Positions 42,533 through 59,407 are shown, numbered from the stretch's first letter. The stretch: 64,000 nt of DNA from Convolutriloba macropyga (GCF_964194025.1 NC_134471.1:16306001-16370000), one strand, 5' to 3'. Translations and numbers: made by a program. The notes: generated from the sequence alone by a model not told the origin.

Positions 42533-43701
42533 AAGTATCCTCCATAACAGTAAGTATCCCTCTTGTAGATGTCTTGCAAATTTCGTTTTGACATGCACAA
42601 AATGTCTTTTGCACTGTGTCTTTATATAGTCAAGATTATAATTTGATCTAATATTTTACCGTGAGTGCCGGCACCCTATATTCATCACGTGTTTAGTGCC
42701 GGCTTCAATTTGATGATGTACATAGCTTCGATAGTCATTTGCTTTTCTACTGTTCATTAGACGTCCAGAGTTTTCCCTTCAATGTCATTTGTGGCGCACA
42801 AAATTCAACCAGATGTTGATCCACCTGTGAATCCTTCTTTTGATGTTCTGACATCCTTGTGGTAACCTGCCGGCTGGTTTGCATTACAAAGATGGATTTG
42901 CATCCATTACATTTTATCTCATATCCCACGTGGGATTTCAGGTCTCCGTCGAAAGATGATTAGGGAGGGATGATCTTAATTTTTGCGTTATAAAAACCAA
43001 TTGCGATTCGCATAGTTTCTTCAATTTGTTTGCAAAACTCTGAGTAAGATTGCCTCTGTTTTGTAGAAAAATAGTTGGCATATCTTGAGACCTAGTCTTG
43101 TTTTTTTGATGCTGCTTTGGTGTTTTTCTTGTTCTCAATTGGGCTTTACCATTTATTATCTTTTCTAAATTCTGATTCAATGTTTTTGAAGACCATTCCT
43201 CTTGATACTGATTTTTGGTCCAGCAAGTTTTGTTCTCTTCAAGAGTCTGATCGAAGGCGAGGCAATTAGATGTTGCATTAAAAACCCTGTGAACCCTCCC
43301 TTGAATCACATTTTTCATAAGCTGAAGCGGTGCACAGCTGCGAAAATTCAGTATTATTCCAGTGTCAGTTGGTTTTTTCATACCATTGACAGGTGATATT
43401 ACTTTTGTTGCTCACATTTACGTTAATGTCAGGAAAAACCAAATTCCCTTCCATATAAAATTTTTCTATGAAAAATTGCAGGTTGTTGTGTAATGAATTT
43501 GCAAANNNNNNNNNNNNNNNNNNNNNNNNNNNNNNNNNNNNNNNNNNNNNNNNNNNNNNNNNNNNNNNNNNNNNNNNNNNNNNNNNNNNNNNNNNNNNNN
43601 NNNNNNNNNNNNNNNNNNNNNNNNNNNNNNNNNNNNNNNNNNNNNNNNNNNNNNNNNNNNNNNNNNNNNNNNNNNNNNNNNNNNNNNNNNNNNNNNNNNN
43701 N

Positions 43702-45598
43702 TGTTCGAACCGCCGAGGGATCTCTCTATTGTCAGTACCAGGCAAAGTGTTCGCTTCCGTTATTCTCAATCGATGCAAAGATTCAGTGGATCGCGTCCTA
43801 AGGGAAGAGCAGTGCGGCTTCAGAAAAAGCAGAGGATGCGCCGATCAACTCTTTGCCCTGCGTCAAATAATAGAGAAATCAATGGTGTTTCAATTGGATA
43901 TTAGCTTTTGTTTCATAGACTTTCGAGCGGCATTCGATTCTGTCGATCGTGAGCAGATGTACCAGATAATGAAACACTATGGTCTTCCGCAAAAAGTGAT
44001 AAACATCATAAGAAACAGCTATGATGGATTCAAATGTCGAGTCAAAGCCGAAGGTGAGAAGGGACGCTTATTTGATGTCAGAACGGGCGTTAGGCAGGGT
44101 GATGTGTGGTCCCCAATCCTATTCGGCCTTGTCATTAACTACATTTTGGCTAACTCGGTGCGTGGAGGATTAGACATTGGGAGATTGGTGGCTGACTTAG
44201 ATTTTGCTGATGATGTTGCTCTCGTGGGGGTCTCAGACAGTGAGGTGCAAGAAAACCTACATCGAATCGAGGCCCTTGCGGAAGCCGCTGGTCTGAAGAT
44301 TAATGTGGCCAAAACAAAGAATATGGGCGTAAAATGCGACAGCCCAAATGTTGTTGCAGTGCCTAGTATCCAACAGAACGTGGAGATACTCACTGGAACA
44401 CATAAAGGCAAACTAGGACTCCTGGCAGAGACATCTAGCCAGTCACGACTAACCATCAGCACGGAGGTGCTGCTGGGAACGAAAAAGAAAGCGGGCTGGT
44501 TCGAAACACAAGATGGCCGGAAGCTAAGATTGAAAAGCTTAGCGGTGGCTAAGCCAGCGTTGGTAGCTTCACAACAACAATCTGCGGTAGCAGATTCAGA
44601 GTCGCTAGAAATTGAGAGTCGGTCAGTGGTGGCTGACCAAGAGTCTTTAAGATGTCAGAATTGTCAGCGGCAATTCAGTACAGTTACCGGACGCAAAGTG
44701 CACCAAACAAGATTCTGCAAAACCGGTTTGTCAAAGAATGTCGTCGACAAGTCAAAGTTCGAGCAACTAGAGGCGAGCCTTACCTGTGACAAGTGTGAAA
44801 AAAGTTCAAAACAGTCAATGGCCGAAAAGTTCAACAATCGAGATACTGTGGCAAACCTAAAGCAGTTGCCACACGCGTGTTTTCCTGCAAAGTACAAGAT
44901 GTTCTCGGAAACGAGTTTGAAAACATAGAAGCGTTCAAGTATCTCGGATCATATGTCAGCCTCAAGCATGGAGACCTGCAGGAAGTCAATTGCAAACTTG
45001 CAGAAGGTAGACAACGGTTTGCTAACTTCCAAAATCTCTGGAAGAGCAAGCAGCTCAGCGTGCACCTCAAGTGCAATTTGTACAAAGCACTCGTTTTATC
45101 AGCCGTGCTGTACAGCTCAGAGACTTGGACTCTTTCGAAATTAATGGAGAAAAAACTTGAGAGTTTCCACTGTGGTTGTCTTCGGAGAATTCCACGTGTG
45201 TCATATCTGGAGAAAACAACGAACGAAGAAATTATGTCAAGATCACGAATGCCCCAACTATCCACGATGATCAAGCTCAAACGGATAAAATGGTACGGAC
45301 ACATCCAGAGAATGGAACCAGGAAGATTAGCCCGCAGTGCCTTCGATTGGGACCCGCCCGATCAATACGTCCATGCTAGACGCGCTCCTGGGGGGCAACG
45401 GAAAACATGGATGAGTCAAATCGAAGGAGACTGTGTACGAAACAAAGTATCGTTCACCAGATTGCAGGAGAAAGCAGCAACCGGGTCAAAGAATGCCTTC
45501 AACAATTTCGTCGTACAGCACTTCACAGAATAACCAAACAAATAACTCTTCTTGTTTTGTTTGTATTTGTTGCCAACCGTGCCTTTATTTCATATTTG
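43702..45598 (+). mobile_element. RTE-like LINE RT region, nearly intact (one frameshift at ~44800)
   Basis: RGISLLSVPGKV, EQCGFRKSRGCADQ, FIDFRAAFDSV, GVRQGDVWSP, FADD, FKYLGS, LYSSETWTL, WYGHIQRM. Confidence 0.9.
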
Positions 45599-45893
45599 NN
45601 NNNNNNNNNNNNNNNNNNNNNNNNNNNNNNNNNNNNNNNNNNNNNNNNNNNNNNNNNNNNNNNNNNNNNNNNNNNNNNNNNNNNNNNNNNNNNNNNNNNN
45701 NNNNNNNNNNNNNNNNNNNNNNNNNNNNNNNNNNNNNNNNNNNNNNNNNNNNNNNNNNNNNNNNNNNNNNNNNNNNNNNNNNNNNNNNNNNNNNNNNNNN
45801 NNNNNNNNNNNNNNNNNNNNNNNNNNNNNNNNNNNNNNNNNNNNNNNNNNNNNNNNNNNNNNNNNNNNNNNNNNNNNNNNNNNNNNNNNNNNN

Positions 45894-48800
45894 CTGAGGG
45901 TATAAACAAGGATGATGATACAAATGATATAACAAAAACAAAAAAAGATATAAATTATGTATTAGCTTGAAAAACATTAATTGAATAGAAAGTCATGCTA
46001 TACAGAAACTACATCTACACCTAAGGTACCACGTGCAAGGTAAGTCAAAATAATATTTATCATTTTCCATTGCCAATAGTAGAATTTGAGTTGCGGTTTT
46101 GGATTTAAAAATTTCCTTGAAAAAACTGAGGCCGACATTAGGAAAATCCGCGGCGTCATTTATAATACGTTCAACTCGAAACGACTTTTCTGTACATCTT
46201 TTCTTAGCTCGTGTTAGTGCCAGACATACGCGATCAAGAGTTCGTAGGTTTAAGACTTTTGAGTCCAACTTGAAAAATTTGTCAAAAGATATGCAATTCT
46301 CGTTGTTTAAGATTGCCGTAAAAACACGTACGTCACGCTCGATGAGTTGATTGCAAATTGGCAGAGAATTGGATAATTTTAGCAGGAAGGAGGTGTCATT
46401 GTAACCAAAGCACCAACGCAGGCTATGGATATTGAATGGTTCTAATTTCCGTAGATCAGAAATTTCAGGAAACCAAGCAGGGTATCCATATAGTAGAACC
46501 GACAAAACACATGCCTTGAATAAATTGATTTTAATTCCAGATGGGAGGTTAAACTGAACACTGTGCTTCAAGTAATTGAACGATCGACGAGCCTTTACTA
46601 TTTTTGTTTGAATATGAAGACTCCAATTCAACGTTTTGGATACTTCAATTCCCAGATCCGTAATATTATCAATCGAAGGAATCTCGACATCACCAATAAT
46701 TATATTATCCAATGCACTTCTAATAATATGTAAATAACCACTTCTAGCTGAATTAAAAGACAAATTGTTACAATAAGCCCATAACCGCAACGAGCATAGA
46801 TCATTTTGAGCACTATTCAAGCAGACGTCGCTATGGCAGAGCAATTTCGTGTCGTCAGCCTAGCAGAAAACTTTTGATTCTTCGGGTACGTCAATCATAT
46901 CCTCAATGAAAATTAAAAAGAAAAGTGGTCCCAACACGCTTCCCTGAGGAACACCACTTGTAACTGGGAGGCTCTCTGATAAAACACCATCTAATTTAAC
47001 ACATTGACGTCTAGATGTTAAAATAATGGTTAATAAGTTTCACAAAATCTTCATCAAAACCAAAATGAATAATCTTCAAAAGCAGCCTGGTGTGGTCCAC
47101 ACAATCAAAAGCTTTGCTTAAACCTAAATAAACGACAACTTGTTCAACGTTTCCGTCAAAATTCAGTTATAACTCATGCAGAAATGTGACCAATTGCGTA
47201 AACGTAGAATGTTTTGCACGAATTTCATGTTGTCTAGGATTCAGCCGATCTTTAATCTTTGGATAAACAAACAGAAATAGAATTTTCCCTTAAACTGATG
47301 ATAACCTCGGGAGTATTGAAATAGGCCGATAATTTTCAACGTGCGCTCGAGGTCTTTTTTTGTGAATAGGAGTAACATAGGCACATTTCCAATTCTCAAG
47401 CCAGAATTATGATTGAAAACTATATGTGAAAACAAGACGGACAAATGATGCTAATGTATGTGCCACTTTAATTAAAATAGTCGGCGGTATGCCATCAAAA
47501 GCAGGAGTTGAGCTTCTGGGGACCGTTAAAAGATTATTTTGAATTTCGTCAAGGCTGAACAGAACATCAGATAACTTGATCTCATTGCCGCACACAAAAT
47601 CAGTTAATCGTATTTCACTTTTCGGTTGAAAAACTAATTGAAAAAATTTGTTGAACAGATTTGCTTTCACTGAGCCTTCAAAAGACACCTCGTTTTTGTA
47701 GAAATTTTGTTTAGGGAAGAAATTTCTACCATTTAAACTTTTCAACATAGCAAACGCTTCATTTTTTGAACTTCTGTACATTGTTCAATAAGACCTGCTT
47801 GTCAATAAGAATCATTAGCTCCCTTTCAAGGCATTCAACTAAATGTTTCTGGTGTTTTCGAGCTTTATTTAGTTTAGGTAAACAATGCATCGTCTGCGAT
47901 GAATAATAGAATGGAGCTTGGAAGCGCTTTCTCCGTTTTCTGTTAAGACTTTGATTGAGAGCGCAAAGTACTTTACGGTAGAACGTTGATAGAGAATCCG
48001 GATTCAAGTTGTGGCATTCCTGAACGAAAGATCGTGAGAATGTTAGATGCGAAGAAAAAACAGCCTCGTTAAAAGAGCTTATCGTATAAGCGTGCCCACT
48101 TGCATCATGGTAATCTAGGTCAACATTTGTTAAAAGAATAGGATAATGATCTGAGCACATTTGCACTACAATATTGAAGTCCCATTTGACCAATAATTCC
48201 AAGATTATGAGTAGGCAAATGAATGATTTGTGTAAGCAATAAATCGTTGCATAAAAATTCTAACAATTTTTGCTCGTCAGAATGAGGCGACGAGATGGAC
48301 TCCCAAGGTACTTTGGGAAAGTTAAAATCACCAAGCAGAATCCACTGGACATTTTTGCGTTGATCACAGCTTAGGCTTGCCTCCACATTGGCAAAAACAC
48401 TTCGCAATTTGTCTTCTGTAGCACCAGGTTTGAAATAAAACAGCGATCCTCGAGGAAGTAAGTATGCGAGTATAATGCAGAGAGTAGGAATCTGGTTACT
48501 AAAGACAAGAACACAAAATTCCTCACAATTTGAATAATAAATTAAGCTAATAGTACCCAAGAAAGCGTTACTCATTGCTACTAGTAGTCCACCTTTCGAT
48601 CTGATCACAAAACGAATGTATAAGTGAGACCTGCGAAAACTCCATTATCACTGACCGAATCATCAAGCCATGTTTCTGTCAGACGGACAACAGTGAAGGA
48701 AACTACGCTTAAGAGCTGGCAAACGTTTAGTCTTTTCTCAATCGATAGAACGCTCTGAACGTTAAAAAGGGGGATCGAAAGTTGAGAGGAGCATTTTGTC

Positions 48801-49733
48801 TGTAGTCAATTCTGTTGTTGTACACGACCACGGCGAATTTTGTATATGTTCGCAGGATTTTGACTTTCAAGTTGACGCTTCTGCGATCGCAAATTGTACT
48901 ACTGCGCTCTCTCAGCTTTAGTTAAGTCTGGTGACACATATACACAACCGAAATTCTCACAATCCCTCAATGCTACTGACTTACGCAGAAATTGATTTCG
49001 TTTTATCATTTCTTTAAACTTCAATAACTGATTTCCTGTATCACATTTTGGTTTTCCAATCCATTTACATTGAACATCAGATGACACAAGAGATACATCA
49101 ATTTGCTTTGCAATTTTTTCAACAATATCGTAGCCAGCACAATTCTCAGATGGCTTTGTCCCTTTTACGATTAAATTTAATCTTTTCGCATCTTTACGTG
49201 ATTGCCATTGCTGAATTTCAGCAAACAATGTTGCTCGAGTCTGCTGCTTATTTTTCAAGGAATTCGTTACCACTTCTGAGTACGATTTTGAATGTTTCAA
49301 CTGATTAGAAGCACAACAAAAGCCGCAAGTGAAAGGTTTGAGAGCAGTCAAAATTAGCGGGGACCAAAACTTTTGTATGTACAGGACAATTCGTAGTCGT
49401 GCGTGCTATTAGTTTTTCAACTAGATCATCGCTGGTGGTACCGATATTGTTACGTGTTCGCGAAGGCATTAAGATGTTATTTAATAAATAGCCTATGGAA
49501 CCAATACGCACCGGCGGCTTAAGTAGATAAAAAGACTGGTAGTGTCTATGGAACCAATACTGGCACCGACGACGCAGAAAAGATACAGCAACAAAAAGTG
49601 CCCGTCAAGCTAGGAACGAGGGGTCTTTGGAATATAATCCTGTGGAACCAATGTTAGCACCGGGGGATATGTTTTGTTCAAGTCCCTAGCTCAATTCGAT
49701 CTATTTAATAAGTTTATCACAACAATTAGGCTA
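45894..49733 (-). mobile_element. Full-length decayed CR1-group LINE (5' leader, 5'UTR, ORF1 ~49469-48830, ORF2 APE-RT), inserted in a Penelope element
   Basis: ORF1 motifs NLIVKG and VYVSPDLTKAER; ORF2 motifs as in the duplicate. Three GGTGC..ATTGGTTCCA repeats in the 5'UTR (49493, 49546, 49640). Confidence 0.88.
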
Positions 49734-49950
49734 GGTTGCTTGAATAGAGCTCTCTTTGAGCAATTTCTGTAGCCTCTCCAACCGGCACGTTGGTGTACAA
49801 ACTTTTGTTACGTCAAGAAATTTTATATGCTCGTTATCTTTAAGAGAGAGAGACTCTAAGGCCTTTAGCATCTTGCGTGTTGGTTTCAATGTTGGCAATT
49901 TTAATCGCAATTTATTTGACAATTCATTTTTCTCTGCAGCCGTAAAATAA
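49734..49950 (-). mobile_element. Penelope-like RT fragment (upstream part of the interrupted element)
   Basis: LESLSLKDNEHIKFLDV, then after a frameshift LYTNVPVGEATEIA..ELYSS. Confidence 0.65.
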
Positions 49951-50353
49951 AACTAATTAGGCACTGTTTTTAATTACTGTTTGATGCCAGCTAGTCTACA
50001 CTCCTCTAACCAGCAATTAATGAAAAGCTGGGTTTTATCGTGAACAGCAGGAAAAGACACCGCGCGTCGTGATTCAGTTCAGCTGATTAGTTTATTTCAG
50101 GTTGCGATTCCATTGTTTCATAAGATTTAGGTTATTTGTTAGTATTTTTGTTGTGAATTTTTGGTTCTGCCGAGGGAATTCATCGCTTATAACCACGTAG
50201 TATCTGTCAAATGGAAGCATGGGGCTGTCTTGGCGTCCCTGGTTTTGACAGACTTCCTTTTTAGGAGAGTGGCGTTCTTTTGATCGAATTTCTACTTAAA
50301 AGAATCCTGGGTTTTGTTTTTTAACTTTCTATGAAATGATTCTAAGATTAAGT

Positions 50354-51109
50354 ATGGGCCTTCTCGAAGATTGCGAGCAGTGCTTCAACACATCGGTTCT
50401 CTACGATATATTGGGTGTCGAAACAAATGTGAGTTCAAGTGACTTGAAAAAAGCGTTTTACAAGAAATCGCTGGAGTTTCACCCTGACAGGAAAAAGGGT
50501 GCGCCTGATGAAGAAGAAAGTACCCTCAAATTTCAAACATTAAACAAGGTGTACAAATTTCTTTCGGATGAAGAGAAGCGAAAAGTATATGATGAAACAG
50601 GGGAAGTTGAAGACACTGATGCTGCGTTATTCGAGAACGATGACTTAGACTTTATGGTTTTCTGGAGGAACCTGTTTCCGAAAGTGACGAAAAAGGACAT
50701 CATGGATTTTAAAGCAAAGTTCAAGCATTCTGAAGAGGAGAAGGAGGATTTGAAGAAATTTTATCTGAAGTTCGAAGGAAACATGGATAGAATTTTCGAA
50801 TGTCTGATGTTTGCTGAAATCGCCGATGAAGAGCGGTACCACAAAATTATAAATGAGATGATTGAATCCAAAAAGATACCCGCATTCAAAGCGTTCACGA
50901 ATGAACCCAAAAAGAAAAAAGATGCTCGGAAGCGCAAATACGAACGTGAGGCTAGGGAAGCTGCCAAAGTTACCGAAAATGGGGGTCTAGAAGATTTGAC
51001 GGCGGCTATTTTGGGTCGTAAAGATAGAGAGAAGACTCACAATGATTTCTTGGCAAATTTGGAGGCAAAGTATGCTTCGGCCGGCAAGAAAAAGCCCAAA
51101 AAGAAGTGA
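50354..51109 (+). CDS. DNAJC9: DnaJ homolog subfamily C member 9 (single coding exon)
   Basis: MGLLEDCEQCF start, J-domain with HPD, FWRNLFPKVTKKDI..F...SEEEKEDLKK, GNMDRIFE, C-terminal NDFLANLEAKY. Confidence 0.92.
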   Translation: MGLLEDCEQCFNTSVLYDILGVETNVSSSDLKKAFYKKSLEFHPDRKKGAPDEEESTLKFQTLNKVYKFLSDEEKRKVYDETGEVEDTDAALFENDDLDFMVFWRNLFPKVTKKDIMDFKAKFKHSEEEKEDLKKFYLKFEGNMDRIFECLMFAEIADEERYHKIINEMIESKKIPAFKAFTNEPKKKKDARKRKYEREAREAAKVTENGGLEDLTAAILGRKDREKTHNDFLANLEAKYASAGKKKPKKK

Positions 51110-51786
51110 TATTCCAAAACTACTGAATATGAACTGGTGTTTTGAGTACTGTTTTTTGATTGAGTGTCCTAGTTTGCTGTTTTTATTGGATGCAATTACT
51201 TACAATTCAATTCGGATTCTTAATATTTTGTTTTCTCTTCCTACTGATTCTGTTAATAGGGTCTCCTATGCGGCATTCTATAGCCGTTCTCATAGAGTTG
51301 AGGTAAAAAATGTTTCAAAAATCAGTGGACATTGTTCAAAAGTCAGTTGAAATTTAAAAGATGTAGAGCTAAAGGGAAAAAACGTTGACGTTCGGCTGAC
51401 TTCATTGATGCCCAATTGCTATCGTGTTTTTCAAACTATTTCAACTTATTAGAAAGACTGGTCTGTCCCATAAAGTTGCTACGCTAGTTAACGTTTCAAA
51501 TTTCACATTTAAAACATGCAGATATCAACCCTTTGATGTTCATTTGCATGTCTGGAGTCTTTTGAACGTTCATTAGCGTTTTAATTTTATGGGACTATTA
51601 ATATCTCCGTTCTGTTAAGGCATCAAGCATTTCTTGGGCATCAATGCAAATCAATGCATTTATAGCTGTGTCGAACCTCTGATGTAGCGATAGATGGAAA
51701 CGTGCAAGCGCGTCATTTTCAAGAATATGTTTAGTTTCGATATGTTCAGGTACAAAATAGCCTGTATGAACTTTCAGACTTGCGAT

Positions 51787-54700
51787 ATGGAGTTTCTCAA
51801 ACAGGCGTTCAAAATCTCCTTCAGTGAGGTTACAGTAACTCCCAGTCCCAAAGACATGCCCTTCTTTGACCCAAACTACGGCTTCTCAGAGCCCAGGCCA
51901 ACATTGCAGCCCACAATGACCGCTAAACAGATGCAAGATGCCGAAATTCCATCGCACAACAGAGATATTTGTGCTCTTGACTATTTCAGGTTATTAACGA
52001 AAATTTAGCTGGATTAAGCGAACACTTGAATTGTTGTATTTATTAGACTTTAATCTGAGTTTTTTTTTTACCATCGACACCTGTTAACAGCTAAGAACAC
52101 AGTACGGGATTTATATTGTTTAGAAGACGAACCACCTAACTAACCTTTTGGAATTGTAAGATCTGGGCACTATTGTTTTCCCATGATTGGCTGCCTATTC
52201 AGAATTCAGAATCTTACACCTACTTTGAGACAATAGAAGAATATCTGTTTCCTGGGCGTATTGCACATTGATTAGAAGAGGAGTATGCTGGTTCTGCTTT
52301 TCGTGGAGCTTAAACTTATTGTTTTCCACCCTTTTTTCCCAAAGTGTGTGAACTGTATGTATGTATGTAAGGCTTTGCAGACCAACCAAGTTGATACCAT
52401 GTTAAGGCTCTGTGAGACGAATTCAAACATCAAAAAAGTGTTCTCTATTTCAAAAAGTTACTGATACCTGCATTTTATCTAATCGGGCAATTTTACTACC
52501 ATTTCGCTCATTTTTTGGTTAATTTTCCAAATGCTGAGAATGAATTATTTTAATACGGTCAAAATCCCATTTCAAATCACATTTCCCGCAAAGTAGCACG
52601 CAGCTCTAAAGACATCTGAACTCGAAATTATAGGCAAAATTGCCTTTTATTAACAAAATAATAGTTTTTAATAGCCGCACAGCGACAGCTGGGACTATTA
52701 TTGGCCTTCTCTGGGTTTTTTTTATTTCGTCGGCGCAATTTTTGTTACGAGCATATGACGTCACAATCACTTCAAATCTGCTTTTTGTTCATTCGTTCAT
52801 GCAATTTCAACTGAAGTGCGTGTGTGACGTCATTTTTCGCTCTTAGTGGAGCGAGTTTTTTCATTCGCGTGATTAAATTTTTGGTCACACTTGACTTACC
52901 TCACTCTCAAAAATGACTTCCTCACTTTGAAATTGACTTTTATTTACTTTAATTCAAAGAAATAAGGTCAAATGGGTGTGTCACTCTAAATGAAGGTTAT
53001 TTGAGAGCAGCTGATAGAGGCAGCAAAAACTGAAACAGATTTTTAATCAAAATATAACATACCGACCTTCAATGAAAAGACGAAATTTTTTGTTCTGTCT
53101 TTTTTACTATTTTTTGAGACTGCAGATCTACAAAGCTATTGCGGCTATTTTCTGGCAATCTGCCAGCTATGTTCGAATTTTAACTGCATCTAAAATATTT
53201 TAAATTACTTATGAAATAATTTTTTCTGGCAAAATTACATGGCTGAATAGTGTTACTCAAAATTGATTAATAATGATAATGCAGACTTTAGAAATAATTG
53301 TTGTGATAAACTTATTAAATAGCCTAATTGTTGTGATAAACTTATTAAATAGTCTCCACGTGCACCCCGGAGGCTATTTAATTCTGTTTTAGCTCTTGAT
53401 TGTAATTATTTACTGTTGTATCAAAGGCCAGACTTTGTTTGGGTAGCCCCAGTTATCGGGGATTTCAGATTCCGGCGGAAGAAACTTGTATGCTTCATAT
53501 TCGACTATTGCAAACGGTGTAGTATTTAACGAATAATGAAGGCCTGACTTCCGAGATCGAACTTTGGCGCAAGGATTCTTCGCAATTGTTCGAGTCTTGG
53601 TTACATTAGGTTATTTTCTCAGTCAACATTTGGCGCGAGGGTTCTCCGCATTTGTTCGACTGATTTATTTGTCTTATAGTTATTTATTTAGATCAAGGAT
53701 TTAGATTATTCGTTTAATTAGGACTTAATCAGCGCTTGCTGCAGTCTTCGGACTGTATTGGTTGGTCCCAAACAATGACGGCTTTGTCCCGCCGCCTCCC
53801 TTATCCTATCCGCCATGCACTGTGTGCATGGGTTTATGTACAGAACATGAACGCGTTATAAATATGTTAATGGATCGTGCCTTGGAATTGCTCAGACAAC
53901 CAGCCCATGATGTTGTCAGCCCATGATCGAATATCTGCTCTTGAAGTTAAATTAGAGAAAGTAGACTCGCTGATTTCTGAAATTCAACCACTGAAGCTGG
54001 AGATAAATTCTCTGAAGAAACTGGGTTACCCGTATCTTAGAGCCGCTTTCAGAAATCGGATTGACAGTACTGCTAGTGATCGTAATTCAAAGAAATGAAA
54101 TGCTGAAGGCAATGAAAATGTGCTTGCCAGCAAAGAGTTTCAAGACAGAAAACCAAAAATTTTCAGGACGGGCAGAAATTTTAATCGTCAGATGGAAATC
54201 AGTGCAATTAAAAGACCACCGAAAAGACGGCATCTCGATTGGTCGTTTAAGCAACTCTGTCTCTACGAATGATATAAGAGAATTTTGCTAGAACAAGGGA
54301 GCAAACTATCTATCTACTGTGTATCCATGAAGTATCTGGGGAAGATTCTCGTCTGAAATCATTCCACTGTGTATTCAAATTCGATAATGATCAAGTTGAA
54401 TCTCGATTTCTGGCACGAAAATGTTCCATTTTCTCGATTATATTTAAATGAAAAAGCGATGCAATGACTGGCCTCCTTTGATACATGACTATCAAAATTC
54501 AAAACTGTCAATGACGTGTAAAAGTATGTTTACATAACGCAAGATAGGTTCGCAACAAGACCTCGGCAAATAAATCTTATTGAAGGTAATGATTTTAACC
54601 TCATAATTTTAACAGAAACGTGGATCAAAGATAACACAACTGATGAGTTTTATCTCAAGCAGTGTTGCCCAAATGGCTATTTTTACTTAGGTGCAAACAG

Positions 54701-57266
54701 AAAAAATTGGCGGAGGATTAGCGGTGTTCTGTGATGGAAATTTGCGTGTCGATAATTTTTCAAACAAGTGTTTTAAAAACGTGGAGGTGACTTTTCTTGA
54801 ATTTACGCTGGGAAAGTCAGTGTATCTTTTGGTTTGTATATACTGTCGACCAAATACTAATCTGCGTTTCTTTAAGTGAATTAACATTGTTTATTGAGGA
54901 GAAAGTGCTGTTAAAAATTTTTTTTATTGTAGGGGATATCAATATTTCTATGCTGATATCAAATGATGCGTCAAGAATTTGGATTTCTTTTTTGGATGAA
55001 TTTGGTTTGCAACAGCAAGTTATCGTGCCTACTCACAAAAATGAATGAAATTTAGACCAGGTTTTTACATCCGAGAAGGTTGAAGTATCAGAACTTCTCG
55101 TAAGTTTCGTTACAAGCTATGATCATGGAATTGTGCACTTTGACCTTCTGCAAGAGCACGAGAATTTAGCTGTAAAGAAGGCCTCGTGCAGAAAATGACA
55201 AAATTTTGACATGGTAGCCTTTGCAGAAAGAATTGTTGCTCCGATCGACAGAGATAATCCTGAAAATGTTTGGAACAGTGTTTTAATGAACGAAATCAGC
55301 TATGTCGATAAGAACCATCCTCTGAAAACTAGATATGTGAGAAATCATACGTGCCCTTTCTTTCACGATGAGCTCAGAACGATGAAAAGATCGAGAAGAA
55401 AGTTTGAGAAAGCTTTCCGAAAGAATGGTACCTCCCAAGCCAAAAGCCGGTTTCTTAATGCAGTTTTGGAGTATTTTGAGCTGTTTACCAAAAAGAAAAT
55501 TGAATACCTCGAAAAATGTGTCGGTAGGGAAAATAAGCGTGTTAGGTATTCTATGCTGCATCATCTCTTAGGAAAAATAATGTTTCCTGCCGCAGTCACT
55601 AGGGGAGCATGAATGTCTAGCAAATAAGTTTAATGTTTTCTTTGTTAAGAAAATAGAAGCCGTATTAGTTTCACTACCTCCAACAAACGGTCCAGAATTG
55701 ATTGATTCAAATACAACAATAACCCTGGAGTTTTTAAGTTTTCACACTGAGCAAATTGCAATTACTTCTACCAAAAATTTCGAACAGTACGGCAACGAGT
55801 GATGTAATATCAACAAGTTATCAACATGTAAAAGTGTTTTGACAAATTCTCTGAGCTACTTCATTGCGTTAATTAATTCAACTCTCCAGACAGGATAATT
55901 CCCAAATCAGTTCAAACAAGGAGTCGTGAGGCCGCTCATAAAGAAGTCTAACCTCGATCCTGAGTTGTTGTGTTATCGCCCTGTGACAAATCTAAGATTC
56001 CTGTCAAATATTATTGAAAGAGTTGTTTTTGAGCAAATTAATTTCTATCTTATGAGCAAGTATCGGAGTGCTTTTCGTTGCCTGCATTCAGCAGAAACGG
56101 CTTTGCTTAAAGTCTTTAATGATCTTTTTTGCTATCGAGACGAGTCGCACTCCGTGATGTATATTGGGTTAGACTTGTCAGCAGCGTCGGATATTATTGA
56201 TCATCAGTTTTTATTTAAGATATTAGCGAAAAGGATTGGTTTGCAATCGGTGGTGTTATTGTTTATTAAGAATTGTCTTTCGCATCGTTCGCAACAAGTT
56301 ATCATGAATGGATGTCTCTCTGGTGATGTTAAAGTTAAGACGGGTGTGCCACAAGGGTCGGTTCTTCGTCCTTTACTTTTTTCCTGTTACATGCTGCCTT
56401 TAGCAGATAAGCTGAAAGAACTGGGAATAAAGTATCTTTTTTACGCTGATGATACCGTTCTTTGTTTTATATTCGGTTCGGCCCTCAGTCAATGCACGTT
56501 AGAGATATTTTGACCTGGATTGAACGTTGGTTCAGCATTGCAAAATTGAAATTGAATGCGAATAAGAGTATATGATTATACGGAAATGCAAAACTGTTAA
56601 ACATGGTCTTTTACGTCTGCCGGAAGATGGTGAGTACACTGAACAGGTAAAAGTTCTAGGTTGTTATTTTGATTATCAACTTACTCTGCAACGACAGGTC
56701 AACTTCGTTTGTTCGAATTCATTTTATTATCTCCGTAAAGTGTGGTCAATTCGTGATCAAGTTAAAACATTGAGTTAATTAGAGTTTTAGTGTTATCACG
56801 TGTTGACCACTGTAATTCTCTTTATTATGGTCTAACAAACTTTTTATTAGCAAAACTTCAGCGAATAATGAACTCTGCAGCGCGTTTGATTTTTCGATTG
56901 TCACCTTCAAACCATCCTCTTCGTACCTGAAGCAGCTACCCTGGTTGCCAATTAGGCAACGCCTTGTGTTCAAAATTCTATTGTATGCGCATCGCTTTGT
57001 ACATCAGCCTGGCAAACTCCCATTATATTTATCGGAACTAATGAAACAAAACACGATGGTTACAAGGTCTCGATATTTTTACAATTTACCTGTTCCCAAA
57101 TTTCTCTTATTTTGGAAGACGTTCGTTCTCGCATGCTGTCGCTGTTGAGTGGAATAAACTCTCCTTTGATTTGAGACTTACAACCTCTGAACTTTTATTC
57201 AGGCGAAAACTCAAAATTTATCTTTAATTTTCCTGTAATGTTGAGATTTTAAATGGTGCTTAAACC

Positions 57267-57334
<68 letters not shown>

Positions 57335-59407
57335 GAAATAAGAACTCCAGGGTTTTTAATCCCAAAAAAAATTCAGTTCACAGTTTGTGTAATTTTAAAT
57401 TTATTTGTTACAGTGCAGGTCCCAAGTACCCATCCAGAACTGATACGCCACGTGCATGGTACCAATTCATTTTTGTGAAGTTCCAAGAAATTTGCACCAT
57501 CTTTCTGCTAGTTGTATAGGGCAACAAAATTTTTTCTGATTCTCTAGTGCTGCCAGTAGCAAGTGACACAAAGCACTTCCAATCGATGTCAACTTGTCCG
57601 GAGAGCATGGAGGAAACCAATAACAAACAGTGCAGCTCGAAGTACAACGAAAACGGCAATAGCTTCAACTTGAAAAGTCGTTCTTTAGTTGTAAGAGCCA
57701 ATGATCCAGAAAGTTGACCATCTTTGAACCGATTCCATCATTTTTGTGTCGGCACTGTTGAGACAAACAACTTCATTTGTATCAGAAAGAATTGGCATCA
57801 CCTAGCCGCAATAAAAGTCAAGCTTTATGGAAACTGATTTATTAGCTGATAGGTTTCTTTTGACTTGAAAAAAAGGCTGCTCTTGCTTTTCTGCACCTGA
57901 CTTCGACATGATCTTTTCAACTTAGTGATTCAGTGATAATGACACAGAGGTCTTTAGATTAGTTGAGGGTGTAAGGATTTTTACGAAAGCAAAGTTCAGT
58001 AACTTTCGGAATTTAGTGCCATGAATTTTGTTTTGCACCACGTTTTCAGAATTTTAGCATCCCTCTGCATATCGCTGATGTCCAAACAAGCGTTAAATCG
58101 TCGGCGTACGCATAGATGAGTGATTTAGTTTGTAGTAGAAGATCATTGATGAATGCGATGAAAAACAACATGCAGAGCCGAGGGGCACCGCTATTGACTG
58201 AAAATTTTTGACCGGACGATGCATTGCTACATCACGCGTTGGGAGCGTTCAGACAAGTAACTGCTAATCAGTTGCAGCAGAAGTCCCTAGTTTCCATACT
58301 ACTGAAGCTTTTGTAAGAAGAATTTGATGATTAACTCTATCGAACGCTTTTGGAGAAGTCAAGATACAGAACACTAAGTGTTTCGTCGTCTCCAGAGGAC
58401 AAGTTCAACAAAGATGACACGAAGTAGGTCACTTGAGCAACCTCTGAGCGTTTCGGAGTGAACCCGAACTGTACGTCCAGTAAATGTTGTCAGATCTGCC
58501 CTTCGATGCAGTCATAAATCAGCTTCTCGAAAACTTTTGCAACAGCAAAGAGGAGGCTGATTGGTCGGTGATTTTCAACGCAGATTTTACTGTCAGTCTA
58601 GTCTTGTGAACCGGGGCACTGTCAGCATACTTCCGTTTGGCTGGAAACACTCGCTTGAGACAGGTCTTAAAGATTAGGCATAAAGGTTTTCTTACTGCTC
58701 TGCTCAAGTTCTTCAAAATGGAATGGGACATACCATCATGCCCGGTGTTTTTATTTGATTTCAATTTTTCTAAGACTGAATGAATGCCTTCTGTCACAAT
58801 CAACTTTCTCAAACAGTCGGTGTGAGTGCATTCAACTGTTAAAGACTCGCTGTTACGGTTTTCTTTTTCGGAAAACACGCTTTGAAAAAAGCCGTTGAAC
58901 ATTTCAGCCATCTCTGTTAGTGTCTGCCACTGTATAGACTTGAAGGCTGATAAACTTGAATTTCGCTGTGCAGAGTTTTTGTTATTATCCCAGTTTTGAC
59001 TCTACGTTGTTCGCGCTTTTGATTTTCTAAAATGGTTCATTCATAGCTTTTACTTGGTATCTTTGATTTGTCTAAACTATTTTGAATGTCTCTAATCGAC
59101 CGTTTCTAAACTAGTGTGACTTGATAGGTTTTGATAAAAATTGGAGTGTTTAAATGCACGCGTACTAGATACAAGATAACTAGTTTGATGTAATTTCAGG
59201 TGGAGAAAGTGTTGCATAGCTCAGCCCAGAAGTTTCTTTATCGAGGAATGCAACGTAGAACGAACTGTTTTCGACAGATGTAAATTGGCTCAGGAAGTGA
59301 ATGCCGTCAAAGAATACGAAAGGGAACGGCGCTTACTGAAAAGACGGGAACGAATTTTGAACAAATTGGCAAAAGAGGCGAAGAAAAATGCCGAATCTTC
59401 AGATTAA
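51787..59407 (+). CDS. NDUFB7: NADH dehydrogenase 1 beta subcomplex subunit 7; exons 51787-51989 and 59200-59407
   Basis: MPFFDPNYGF...QMQDAEIPSHNRDICA...R|WRKC...EEC...RC...VKEYERERRLLKR; phase-2 GT-AG intron of 7.2 kb. Confidence 0.9.
52669..53171 (+). mobile_element. HINE in the NDUFB7 intron
   Basis: TT|AATAGCCGC...GCGGCTATT-TT-CTGGCAATCTGCCAG-CTATG|TT. Confidence 0.82.
53295..57333 (+). mobile_element. Full-length decayed L2/Crack-like LINE with (ATA)n tail and 8-bp TSD
   Basis: ORF1 remnant, APE (LTETWIK, GGGLAV, VGDINI), RT ([25 protein letters not shown]). TSD AGAAATAA at 53290-53297 and 57334-57341. Confidence 0.9.
57267..57333 (+). repeat. (ATA)n microsatellite, LINE tail
   Basis: Direct reading. 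Confidence 0.95.
57342..58940 (-). mobile_element. 5'-truncated decayed CR1-group LINE; its 3' tail probably lies at ~53265-53289, split off by the L2 insertion
   Basis: AEMFNGFFQSVF, KNTGHDG, YLDFSK, YADD, LKLLPFSLYFELH. Confidence 0.75.

What the first reader, a model, noticed from the sequence alone, without database searches (positions are those of the whole stretch)
49701..53352. Two unrelated full-length LINEs start with the same 30-33 nt leader: candidate spliced-leader-capped retrotransposons
Seen: TAGCCTAATTGTTGTGATAAACTTATTAAATAG is identical at the extreme 5' end of a minus-strand CR1-group LINE (49733->49701) and near the 5' end of a plus-strand L2-like LINE (53320-53352). Similarity stops exactly after the final AG. 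I found it nowhere else in the window, and the 5'-truncated LINEs lack it. Established: spliced leaders are short, often AT-rich 5' exons added by trans-splicing in many invertebrates, and retrocopies can carry them into DNA. Inference: these LINE RNAs are SL trans-spliced, gaining a cap and a defined 5' end from read-through transcripts, and are then reverse-transcribed with the SL attached. This differs from NeSL/CRE/SLACS, which insert into SL RNA genes; here APE-type LINEs of different clades carry the leader to unrelated sites.
Basis: partly seen in the sequence, partly recalled or inferred. Interest (0 to 1): 0.9.

Follow-up and report, generated by a model that had tools for sequence, protein, structure and literature searches.

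The report
Spliced-leader-tagged LINE retrotransposons in an acoel
The shared 33-base leader is this acoel worm's published spliced leader, and hundreds of LINE copies from many unrelated families carry a DNA copy of it at their very start, which indicates that their RNAs are trans-spliced before being copied back into the genome.

Summary

- **Identity of the leader.** The 33-mer is exact at 49733->49701 (-) and 53320-53352 (+). It matches the published spliced leader (SL) of the acoel Symsagittifera roscoffensis.
- **SL RNA genes.** The genome holds about 1,270 SL RNA genes (leader followed by GT). They sit in tandem arrays interleaved with 5S rRNA genes.
- **Dispersed copies.** At least 651 dispersed leader copies are not followed by G.
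- **What follows them.** In a positional sample of 30 dispersed copies, the leader heads at least 19 nucleotide-unrelated sequences. Where they could be classified, these encode LINE ORF1-type proteins and APE endonucleases.
- **Junction evidence.** The leader always ends exactly at the SL exon/donor boundary. In six families, including both window families, short copies have the leader joined exactly after a YAG acceptor (mostly TTTCAG) that lies inside longer sister copies. This is the signature of splicing. It does not fit template switching, or insertion into SL genes.
- **Relic leader in the window.** The plus element carries a second, tandem relic leader joined after the AG at the start of the next leader, as in dinoflagellate relict SLs.

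No RNA data could be reached, so trans-splicing of LINE RNA is inferred from DNA only. Similar loci were noted only in passing in parasitic flatworms. I class this as a new variant of a known kind.

The parts
49701..49733 (-). DNA-encoded spliced leader (T + 32-nt SL exon) at the extreme 5' end of the minus-strand LINE. This is the short-form junction, with the leader joined directly to ATCGAATTGAGC.
   Evidence: Exact match. Identical to the SL exon of the SL RNA genes and to the published SL. Sister copies start at the same base.
45993..49700 (-). Body of the minus-strand APE/RT LINE. It is degenerate, with many frameshifts. Its 3' end runs into the masked N stretch at 45598-45893 and could not be defined.
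   Evidence: Exo_endo_phos_2 at 48120-48608 (below gathering score). ORF pieces with RT-like motifs. 47 genomic matches to its first 400 nt at 76-95% identity.
53295..53322 (+). Relic leader copy lacking the first 4 bases of the SL. It marks the true 5' end of the plus-strand LINE.
Evidence: exact 22-mer at 53301-53322.
53323..53352 (+). Second leader copy lacking its initial AG, joined directly to the end of the relic leader (AAATAG|CCTAATTG). This fits re-splicing at the AG at the start of a DNA-encoded leader.
   Evidence: The same leader-leader joint occurs 6 times genome-wide and 0 times in the reversed-pattern control.
53353..57333 (+). Body of the plus-strand APE/RT LINE, long form. An internal YAG acceptor ends at 53392, and the sister copy L008 has the leader joined exactly at 53393. 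The RT core is at 55926-56513. The (AAT)n 3' tail is at 57267-57333.
   Evidence: RVT_1 at 63 bits. Junction comparison. Tail read directly. 41 genomic matches to the first 400 nt.
53290..53297 (+). Candidate 8-bp target-site duplication AGAAATAA, upstream copy. It overlaps the relic leader by 3 bases of microhomology.
   Evidence: Read directly. It is short and AT-rich, so weak on its own.
57334..57341 (+). Candidate target-site duplication AGAAATAA, downstream copy, immediately after the (AAT)n tail.

Best explanation
The leader is the organism's spliced leader (SL) exon. LINE pre-RNAs are most likely made by read-through from neighbouring transcription. The spliceosome trans-splices them to the SL at an AG acceptor at or near the element's 5' end. 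The mature SL-LINE RNA is then reverse-transcribed and integrated by the element's own APE/RT machinery, so each full-length daughter copy begins with a DNA copy of the SL.

This happens in many LINE families and has happened repeatedly. When an integrated copy is transcribed from upstream again, a new SL is spliced to one of three sites:
- the AG at the 3' end of the encoded SL, which regenerates the same 5' end;
- an internal TTTCAG-type acceptor, which gives a shorter form;
- the AG at the start of the encoded SL, which gives tandem relic leaders like the one in the window.

Shown: the identity of the leader, the SL RNA genes, the dispersed SL-LINE copies, the exact exon boundary, the AG-acceptor logic, and the relic leaders.

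Inferred: that the RNA is trans-spliced (from DNA products only), read-through transcription, reuse of the encoded SL's own 3' AG, and any benefit such as a cap, a defined 5' end, or removal of upstream AUGs.
For: 1. **Leader identity.** The leader matches the published S. roscoffensis SL.
2. **SL RNA genes.** The exon is followed by GTAAGT or GTAATT. There are 1,274 exact copies in arrays on C9 with 5S rRNA genes between them. The fold has z = -4.2.
3. **Dispersed copies.** At least 651 exact copies are not followed by G. They are strand-symmetric (323/328) and lie on all large contigs.
4. **What follows.** 30 sampled copies are followed by at least 19 unrelated nucleotide families. Their ORFs include PHD-type and Transposase_22-type ORF1s, with APE domains about 1 kb downstream in 7 loci.
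5. **Exon boundary.** In every copy the leader ends at the exon boundary. No SL intron sequence follows.
6. **Acceptor logic.** In six within-family comparisons the short form has the SL joined exactly after an AG of the long form, and five of the six are YTTYAG. The comparisons are the minus family, the plus family, L006/L026, L011/L016-17, L004/L007 and L063/L069.
7. **Recent alternative junctions.** L011 and L016/17 are 97-98% identical yet differ in junction.
8. **Near-universal tagging.** 27 of 30 minus-family loci carry the SL or a remnant, and the other three are 5'-truncated. 35 of 39 TTTYAG-bearing copies of another family have the SL directly upstream, and 18 have the SL joined at AGATG.
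9. **Relic leaders.** The window has a tandem relic, there are 6 such joints genome-wide, and L001/L002 have SL + 33 nt of flank + partial SL + element.
10. **Very short 5' UTRs.** In several L1-like families the ORF1 ATG lies 2-15 nt after the SL, which leaves no room for a 5'-UTR promoter.
Against: - No RNA data could be examined. All runs found behave as DNA, with even 75-135x coverage of unique sequence.
- Because the SL is DNA-encoded in these copies, transcripts starting with SL would not by themselves prove trans-splicing.
- A few long-form junctions in the minus family are not preceded by AG in sister copies: L066/L088 and L076.
- One diverged comparator, L020, has TAT where relatives have CAG.
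- Retroposition hallmarks for the window elements are incomplete. The minus element's 3' end is masked, and the plus element's target-site duplication is only 8 AT-rich bases.
- The sample of dispersed copies (30 on contig C1) was selected by an exact leader match.
Confidence: 0.88

Rival explanations
1. Capture once, then inheritance. Each family acquired the SL once by a single trans-splicing event. Since then it has transcribed the SL as an ordinary part of its 5' end from an internal promoter that starts at the first base, as in Drosophila jockey or I elements. The SL would then be a fossil and not re-added each cycle.
For: The SL is DNA-encoded in essentially all full-length copies. The long SL|TTTCAG form persists in 103 copies, which a precise internal start site would also explain. 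No RNA data distinguish the two models.
Against: - Near-identical copies (97-98%) differ in junction.
- Relic leaders, and a transduced flank between two leaders, require transcription from upstream followed by new splicing.
- Families unalignable in nucleotides all carry the current SL-gene sequence, not family-specific variants.
- In several families there is no 5' UTR to hold a promoter.
- At least 19 independent captures are needed anyway.
Confidence: 0.08
2. Template switching. The LINE reverse transcriptase jumps from the 5' end of LINE RNA onto abundant SL RNA, giving chimeric retrocopies like the human U6/L1 chimeras.
For: SL RNA is abundant, with about 1,270 genes. Some 5' junctions show stuttered partial leader pieces and reduplicated flank.
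Against: A jump onto SL RNA would copy it from its 3' end and so include the intron half. No copy has any base of it, and all end at the exon boundary. The joints fall at YAG acceptors and at defined element ends, not at random truncation points.
Confidence: 0.02
3. Target-site specificity. The LINEs insert into SL RNA genes or SL-like sequences (NeSL/CRE/SLACS style), so the leader is target DNA and not part of the RNA.
For: SL-gene-targeting LINEs are known in nematodes and trypanosomatids.
Against: - Upstream flanks are unrelated to the conserved SL-gene upstream region, and nothing of the SL gene follows the elements.
- The copies are dispersed and strand-symmetric.
- The elements have APE domains, and no REL endonuclease was seen.
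- Many unrelated families would need the same specificity.
- The junction position varies by acceptor.
- The earlier follow-up found that case to be a one-off.
Confidence: 0.01
4. The leader is the end of an unrelated MITE or repeat, or an assembly artefact.
For: A very high-copy dispersed repeat lies just upstream of the plus element at 52589-53204.
Against: That repeat ends before the leader and is not associated with other leader copies. The leader equals the SL exon and is found at hundreds of LINE starts on all chromosomes-scale contigs. DNA contigs from several runs show the leader followed by many different sequences (loose ends at 49699/49700 and 53353).
Confidence: 0.01

Closest known systems
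Dinoflagellate retrogenes with relict spliced leaders (recycled processed cDNAs; e.g. PMC5585692, PMC6050394, PMC12014239)
   Same: Both have a DNA-encoded SL at the 5' end of retrocopies made from trans-spliced RNA. Both show tandem relic leaders truncated at an AG inside the leader, which is evidence of repeated transcription, splicing and retroposition cycles.
   Different: In dinoflagellates the tagged copies are host genes mobilised in trans. Here 29 of 30 sampled copies look like the LINEs themselves, and no host-gene retrocopy was seen. The host is an animal in which only about 30% of genes are trans-spliced.
SL-bearing transposable-element loci noted in parasitic flatworms (S. mansoni, PMC5832876; 24 species, PMC12582326)
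   Same: Genomic SL exon pieces are attached to LINE/LTR elements. The authors suggested integration of retrotransposon transcripts that had received the SL.
   Different: Those were by-products of SL-gene screens: 6 loci in one study, and 597 loci with partial leaders in the other. They were discarded, with no junction analysis, and a possible assembly artefact was acknowledged. Here the leader is full length, sits at the exact 5' end of nearly all full-length copies of many families, and the acceptor logic is shown. The acoel genome paper (PMC9911081) does not mention it.
SL on transposon transcripts in Hydra (PMC12220107)
   Same: About 30% of TE Iso-Seq reads carry an SL, so TE RNAs use the host trans-splicing machinery.
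   Different: That is RNA-level evidence only; no DNA-encoded leaders at element starts were reported there. Here it is the reverse: DNA-level evidence only.
SL-gene-specific LINEs: NeSL-1, CRE1/2, SLACS, CZAR
   Same: These are LINEs whose biology is tied to the SL system.
   Different: Those insert site-specifically into SL RNA genes using a restriction-like endonuclease (my own knowledge of these families). Here APE-type LINEs at unrelated sites carry the SL exon as part of their RNA.
5' end definition of co-transcribed LINEs by HDV-like ribozymes (R2, L1Tc; PMC3383444, and my own knowledge of R2)
   Same: Functional analogy: a promoter-poor LINE is released from a longer co-transcript by RNA processing at its exact 5' end.
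   Different: A ribozyme leaves an uncapped 5' OH. SL trans-splicing would add a capped leader. The processing mark is copied into DNA here.
U6/L1 chimeric retrocopies (PMC11838501)
   Same: A small spliceosomal-type RNA sequence is fused 5' of LINE sequence in DNA.
   Different: U6 chimeras contain the whole small RNA joined at variable truncation points by template switching. Here only the exon half is present, joined at splice acceptors.

Membership tests
Retrocopy of an SL trans-spliced RNA | 5' leader identical to the organism's SL exon | tested here: met
   Matches the published SL and the exon of 1,274 GT-followed genes.
Retrocopy of an SL trans-spliced RNA | Leader ends exactly at the exon/donor boundary, with no SL intron sequence | tested here: met
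   All 30 + 27 copies inspected end at ...AAATAG and are followed by diverse sequence.
Retrocopy of an SL trans-spliced RNA | The junction coincides with a 3' splice acceptor in unspliced or longer versions | tested here: met
   Six of six informative within-family comparisons have AG, and five have YTTYAG. Some odd junctions remain (L066, L076).
Retrocopy of an SL trans-spliced RNA | Retroposition hallmarks (3' tail, target-site duplication, dispersed) | tested here: inconclusive
   The copies are dispersed and strand-symmetric. The plus element has an (AAT)n tail and an 8-bp candidate TSD. The minus element's 3' end is masked.
Retrocopy of an SL trans-spliced RNA | SL-LINE transcripts produced by trans-splicing exist in RNA | not testable with these tools
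   No RNA run was found, and the runs laid are DNA-like contigs.
APE-type LINE (non-LTR retrotransposon) | APE endonuclease and reverse transcriptase, ORF1 upstream | tested here: met
   Window: Exo_endo_phos_2 (sub-threshold) and RVT_1. Genome sample: Exo_endo_phos above threshold in L012, L016 and L017, and Transposase_22 in L022.
CR1 versus L2 clade assignment of the two window elements | RT phylogeny with reference elements | not tested
   The only result is that the two are unalignable in DNA and share a 48-aa RT block at 44% identity.
SL-gene-targeting LINEs (NeSL/CRE/SLACS) | Insertion at a fixed site inside SL RNA genes, with SL-gene sequence on both sides | tested here: not met
   Flanks are unrelated to the SL-gene upstream or intron sequence.
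SL-gene-targeting LINEs (NeSL/CRE/SLACS) | Restriction-like endonuclease instead of APE | tested here: not met
   APE domains were found.
snRNA/LINE template-switch chimeras (U6/L1 type) | Whole small RNA, including its 3' part, fused to variably truncated LINE | tested here: not met
   Only the exon half is present, and the joints are at acceptors and defined ends.
Bona fide SL RNA gene (for the GT-followed loci) | Exon + GT donor, stem-loops, Sm-like U-rich site, tandem arrays often linked to 5S rDNA | tested here: met
   The fold is -30.2 kcal/mol with z = -4.2. A 5S rRNA gene at 118 bits lies between SL genes. The Sm-like site was judged by eye only.

The most novel reading that the evidence does not exclude
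Many LINE families of this acoel have given up a 5'-UTR promoter. They depend on host read-through transcription plus SL trans-splicing to obtain a capped, exact 5' end. The DNA-encoded leader, often reinforced by a conserved TTTCAG, acts as a portable, self-renewing 3' splice acceptor that each daughter copy carries to its new site. This would be a LINE 5'-end strategy distinct from internal promoters and from ribozyme processing. It would also make the leader a built-in tag for dating and counting retrotransposition cycles in an animal.
Probability: 0.4. Interest if true: 0.8.

Novelty: new variant of a known kind. Interest (0 to 1): 0.62.

Why it matters
**The open question it addresses.** How a LINE restores a complete, translatable 5' end at every generation is a long-standing problem. 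The known solutions are internal promoters and self-cleaving ribozymes.

**What this genome offers.** Hundreds of copies from many families point to a third solution: the host's spliced-leader trans-splicing.

**Why it is testable.**
- The splicing mark is written into DNA, so junction variants and relic leaders record the acceptor used in each cycle.
- Public RNA-seq already exists for the species.

**Practical consequence.** Pipelines that use the leader to call trans-spliced genes, or SL RNA genes, in acoels and flatworms will pick up LINE starts.

**Broader link.** It extends to animals the relict-SL logic known from dinoflagellate retrogenes.

Tried and rejected
- **RNA evidence.** Two run searches found only DNA-like runs from one study. 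The single read-laying run showed even coverage of unique DNA, so nothing can be said about expression.
- **Genome letters.** The plus family's sister copies could therefore be judged only from coordinates and from L008, L010, L013, L014 and L019. After that point only counts were possible.
- **Pfam on ORF1 pieces.** Mostly blank. ORF1 types rest on one above-threshold Transposase_22 hit, weak PHD hits, and motifs read by eye.
- **Clade assignment (CR1 vs L2).** Not attempted. The large homology search needs full-length queries, and no LINE reference set was available.
- **Rfam.** It has no model matching this SL RNA and found only 5S rRNA.
- **My recollection about bdelloid Penelope retrogenes.** I recalled that a paper reported SL-tagged copies. 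I checked, and this was wrong.
- **L074.** It looked like a native unspliced 5' end, but it is simply a copy truncated at TTTTCAG in unique DNA.
- **L020 and L019.** Not informative for the acceptor test.
- **Rejected readings.** Insertion into SL genes, template switching, MITE ends, and assembly artefact (see the rival explanations).
Full report
**1. Observation**

No other match exists at up to three mismatches, and none was expected by chance.

A search with the 3' two-thirds of the leader finds a third copy at 53301-53322. Reading the sequence shows a tandem arrangement at the plus element. A leader lacking its first four bases (53295-53322) is followed directly by a leader lacking its first two bases, AG (53323-53352). 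Downstream of the final AG the two loci are unrelated.

**2. What the leader is**

A full-text search with 20 bases of the leader hits only the genome paper of the acoel Symsagittifera roscoffensis. That paper reconstructs the same sequence as the trans-spliced leader found on transcripts, and reports that 30.2% of genes are SL trans-spliced (PMC9911081). The window's assembly (1.18 Gb) fits that species or a very close relative; this is an inference.

The GT-followed form exists in 1,274 exact copies, almost all in tandem arrays on contig C9. The gene reads upstream T-run, 32-nt exon, then GTAAGT or GTAATT. The 107-nt transcript folds into a stem-loop that holds the donor site, then a U-rich single-stranded stretch, then a strong 3' hairpin (-30.2 kcal/mol, z = -4.2). 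5S rRNA genes sit between the SL genes, a linkage known from other SL-using organisms.

**3. What lies behind dispersed leaders**

Besides the genes, at least 651 exact leader 3' ends are followed by A, C or T. They are equally frequent on both strands and occur on all large contigs.

I fetched the first 30 dispersed copies on contig C1, a positional sample.
- The leader is preceded by unrelated flanks and followed by at least 19 nucleotide-unrelated sequences.
- The downstream ORFs look like LINE ORF1 proteins: PHD-finger type in L003 and L006, and Transposase_22 above threshold in L022. Several others carry the RRM-like motifs of the latter type, by eye.
- About 1 kb downstream, seven loci have APE endonuclease domains.
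- None looks like a retrocopy of a host gene.

The two window elements are also APE/RT LINEs: APE at 48120-48608 (sub-threshold) and RVT_1 at 55926-56513. I did not test the CR1 and L2 labels. The two share only a 48-residue RT block at 44% identity.

**4. The leader marks the true family 5' end**

I used the first 400 bases after the leader as a query against the genome. Most sister copies of both window families start at query base 1.

In the 30 fetched loci of the minus family:
- 27 carry the leader or a remnant of it;
- the three without one are 5'-truncated copies (L074, L086, L090).

**5. The signature of splicing**

The minus family has two junction classes.
- Ten copies, including the window copy, have the leader joined directly to ATCRAATTGAGC.
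- Seventeen have about 35 extra bases between the leader and that point. Those extra bases end in TATTTTCAG.

The short form is what results if a new leader is spliced to the internal acceptor of a long-form transcript.

The plus family behaves the same way. The window copy, L010, L013 and L014 are long forms with an internal TTTCAG or TTTTAG ending at window 53392. L008 has the leader joined exactly at the next base.

The same relation holds for L026/L006, L016-17/L011, L007/L004 and L063/L069. That makes six of six informative comparisons with AG, five of them YTTYAG. L011 and L016/17 are 97-98% identical, so alternative acceptor use is recent.

In no copy does any base of the SL intron follow the leader. 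This excludes copying of whole SL RNA by template switching. The unrelated flanks exclude insertion into SL genes.

**6. Evidence for repeated cycles**

The window's leader-leader joint (AAATAG|CCTAATTG) is what results if a transcript entering an integrated copy from upstream is spliced at the AG that opens the encoded leader. This is the logic of relict leaders in dinoflagellate retrogenes. The joint occurs six times in the genome and never in the reversed control.

L001 and L002 show leader, 33 bases of foreign sequence, a partial leader, and then the element. This fits splicing at an AG in the upstream flank of an older, truncated copy.

In one L1-like family, 35 of 39 copies that retain the TTTYAG hexamer have the leader directly upstream, and 18 copies have the leader joined after the hexamer. 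Genome-wide, 103 leaders are followed by TTTCAG, in at least five nucleotide-unrelated families. In these families the ORF1 ATG lies 2-15 bases after the leader. There is therefore no 5' UTR to hold a promoter.

The long form persists, and this suggests that the AG ending the encoded leader is itself reused as an acceptor. That is an inference. An internal promoter starting precisely at the first base is the alternative.

**7. Mechanism proposed**

Read-through pre-RNA is SL trans-spliced at the element's 5' acceptor. The resulting SL-LINE RNA presumably carries the SL's cap and has no upstream AUG, since the leader contains no ATG. It is translated and reverse-transcribed in cis, and the daughter copy begins with the leader.
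- Shown: all the DNA-level anatomy described above.
- Inferred: the RNA steps, the source of transcription, and any selective benefit.

For the plus element, an (AAT)n tail (57267-57333) and a matching 8-bp AGAAATAA on both sides (53290-53297 and 57334-57341) fit target-primed insertion, but this is weak evidence. The minus element's 3' end lies in a masked stretch, which I left as it is.

**8. What could not be done**

No RNA run was available. The four runs laid are DNA-like, with even coverage of unique sequence. They show only that the leader is high-copy and followed by many different sequences.

Three observations remain unexplained:
- a few junction variants without AG;
- the T or TT that precedes AGCC in about 70% of copies, which may mean the SL RNA starts one or two bases upstream of the published sequence, since the main gene type has a T-run there;
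- reduplicated flank-plus-leader-start pieces at 4 of 40 junctions.

**9. Comparison with what is known**

- DNA-encoded relict leaders on retrogenes are well known in dinoflagellates (PMC5585692, PMC6050394).
- In S. mansoni, six genome-encoded SL exons merged with transposable elements were noted, with the suggestion that they are retro-transcribed trans-spliced elements or assembly errors (PMC5832876).
- A 2025 survey of parasitic flatworms discarded 597 partial-leader loci associated with LINE and LTR elements, with the same suggestion (PMC12582326).
- In Hydra, about 30% of TE Iso-Seq reads carry an SL (PMC12220107).
- The acoel genome paper does not mention the phenomenon.
- I found no paper that analyses junctions, shows near-universal leader-tagging of full-length LINEs across families, or reports relic leaders in an animal. 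The library does not cover subscription journals.

Other first-stage notes of this scan report the same pattern in other windows of this genome. They are unchecked leads and fit the genome-wide counts here.

**10. Verdict**

It is a new variant of a known kind: SL-tagged retrocopies, here the LINEs themselves, in an animal, on a large scale. Interest 0.62. It would rise if RNA data show that these LINEs depend on trans-splicing for their 5' ends.

Noticed in passing
L042:2284-2402 (SL RNA gene array, genome contig C9 around 23.19 Mb): 5S rRNA genes (118 bits) are interleaved with the SL RNA genes in the tandem arrays. Array units are about 1.06-2.0 kb. There are two kinds of SL-gene upstream region: one ends in a T-run and the other in TTTAAA.
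   Followed up: partly
window 52589-53204: A very high-copy dispersed repeat lies just upstream of the plus LINE. Summed contig depth is up to about 1.9 million against about 75 for unique DNA in the same run. There are at least 3,735 candidate genomic matches at about 92-93% identity. No terminal inverted repeats were found and it was not classified. It is not linked to the leader.
   Followed up: partly
window 50336-51109 (+): An intact, intronless 257-aa DnaJ + DNAJC9-HTH gene lies between the two LINE starts. The minus LINE starts about 600 bp upstream of its ATG in divergent orientation. The plus LINE lies 2.2 kb downstream in the same orientation. Either arrangement could supply read-through or bidirectional transcription; this is speculation.
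   Followed up: no
window 43864-45533 (+), and N runs at about 43500-43700 and 45598-45893: A third LINE fragment with RVT_1, 5'-truncated and without a leader, abuts the 3' region of the minus LINE. Two masked N stretches interrupt this area and hide the minus LINE's 3' end.
   Followed up: no
L001-L030, L061-L090 and window: bases just upstream of AGCC: T precedes the leader in 30 of 39 junctions, and TT in about 60%, against a background T of 31%. The main SL gene type has a T-run there, so the SL RNA may be 33-34 nt and not the published 31-32. The published leader also ends in an extra A that is not in the SL gene.
   Followed up: partly
L023, L026, L028, L030 (5' junctions); also L007, L064, L067, L077: In L023, L026, L028 and L030, the last 5-15 bases of flank plus the first 2-9 bases of the leader are repeated 26-37 bases upstream. 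In L007, L064, L067 and L077, partial leader pieces precede the full leader. These look like stuttering at the 5' junction or further relic leaders.
   Followed up: partly
genome-wide: No host-gene retrocopy was seen among the 30 sampled dispersed leaders, although about 30% of host genes are trans-spliced. This suggests strong cis-preference of these LINEs.
   Followed up: no
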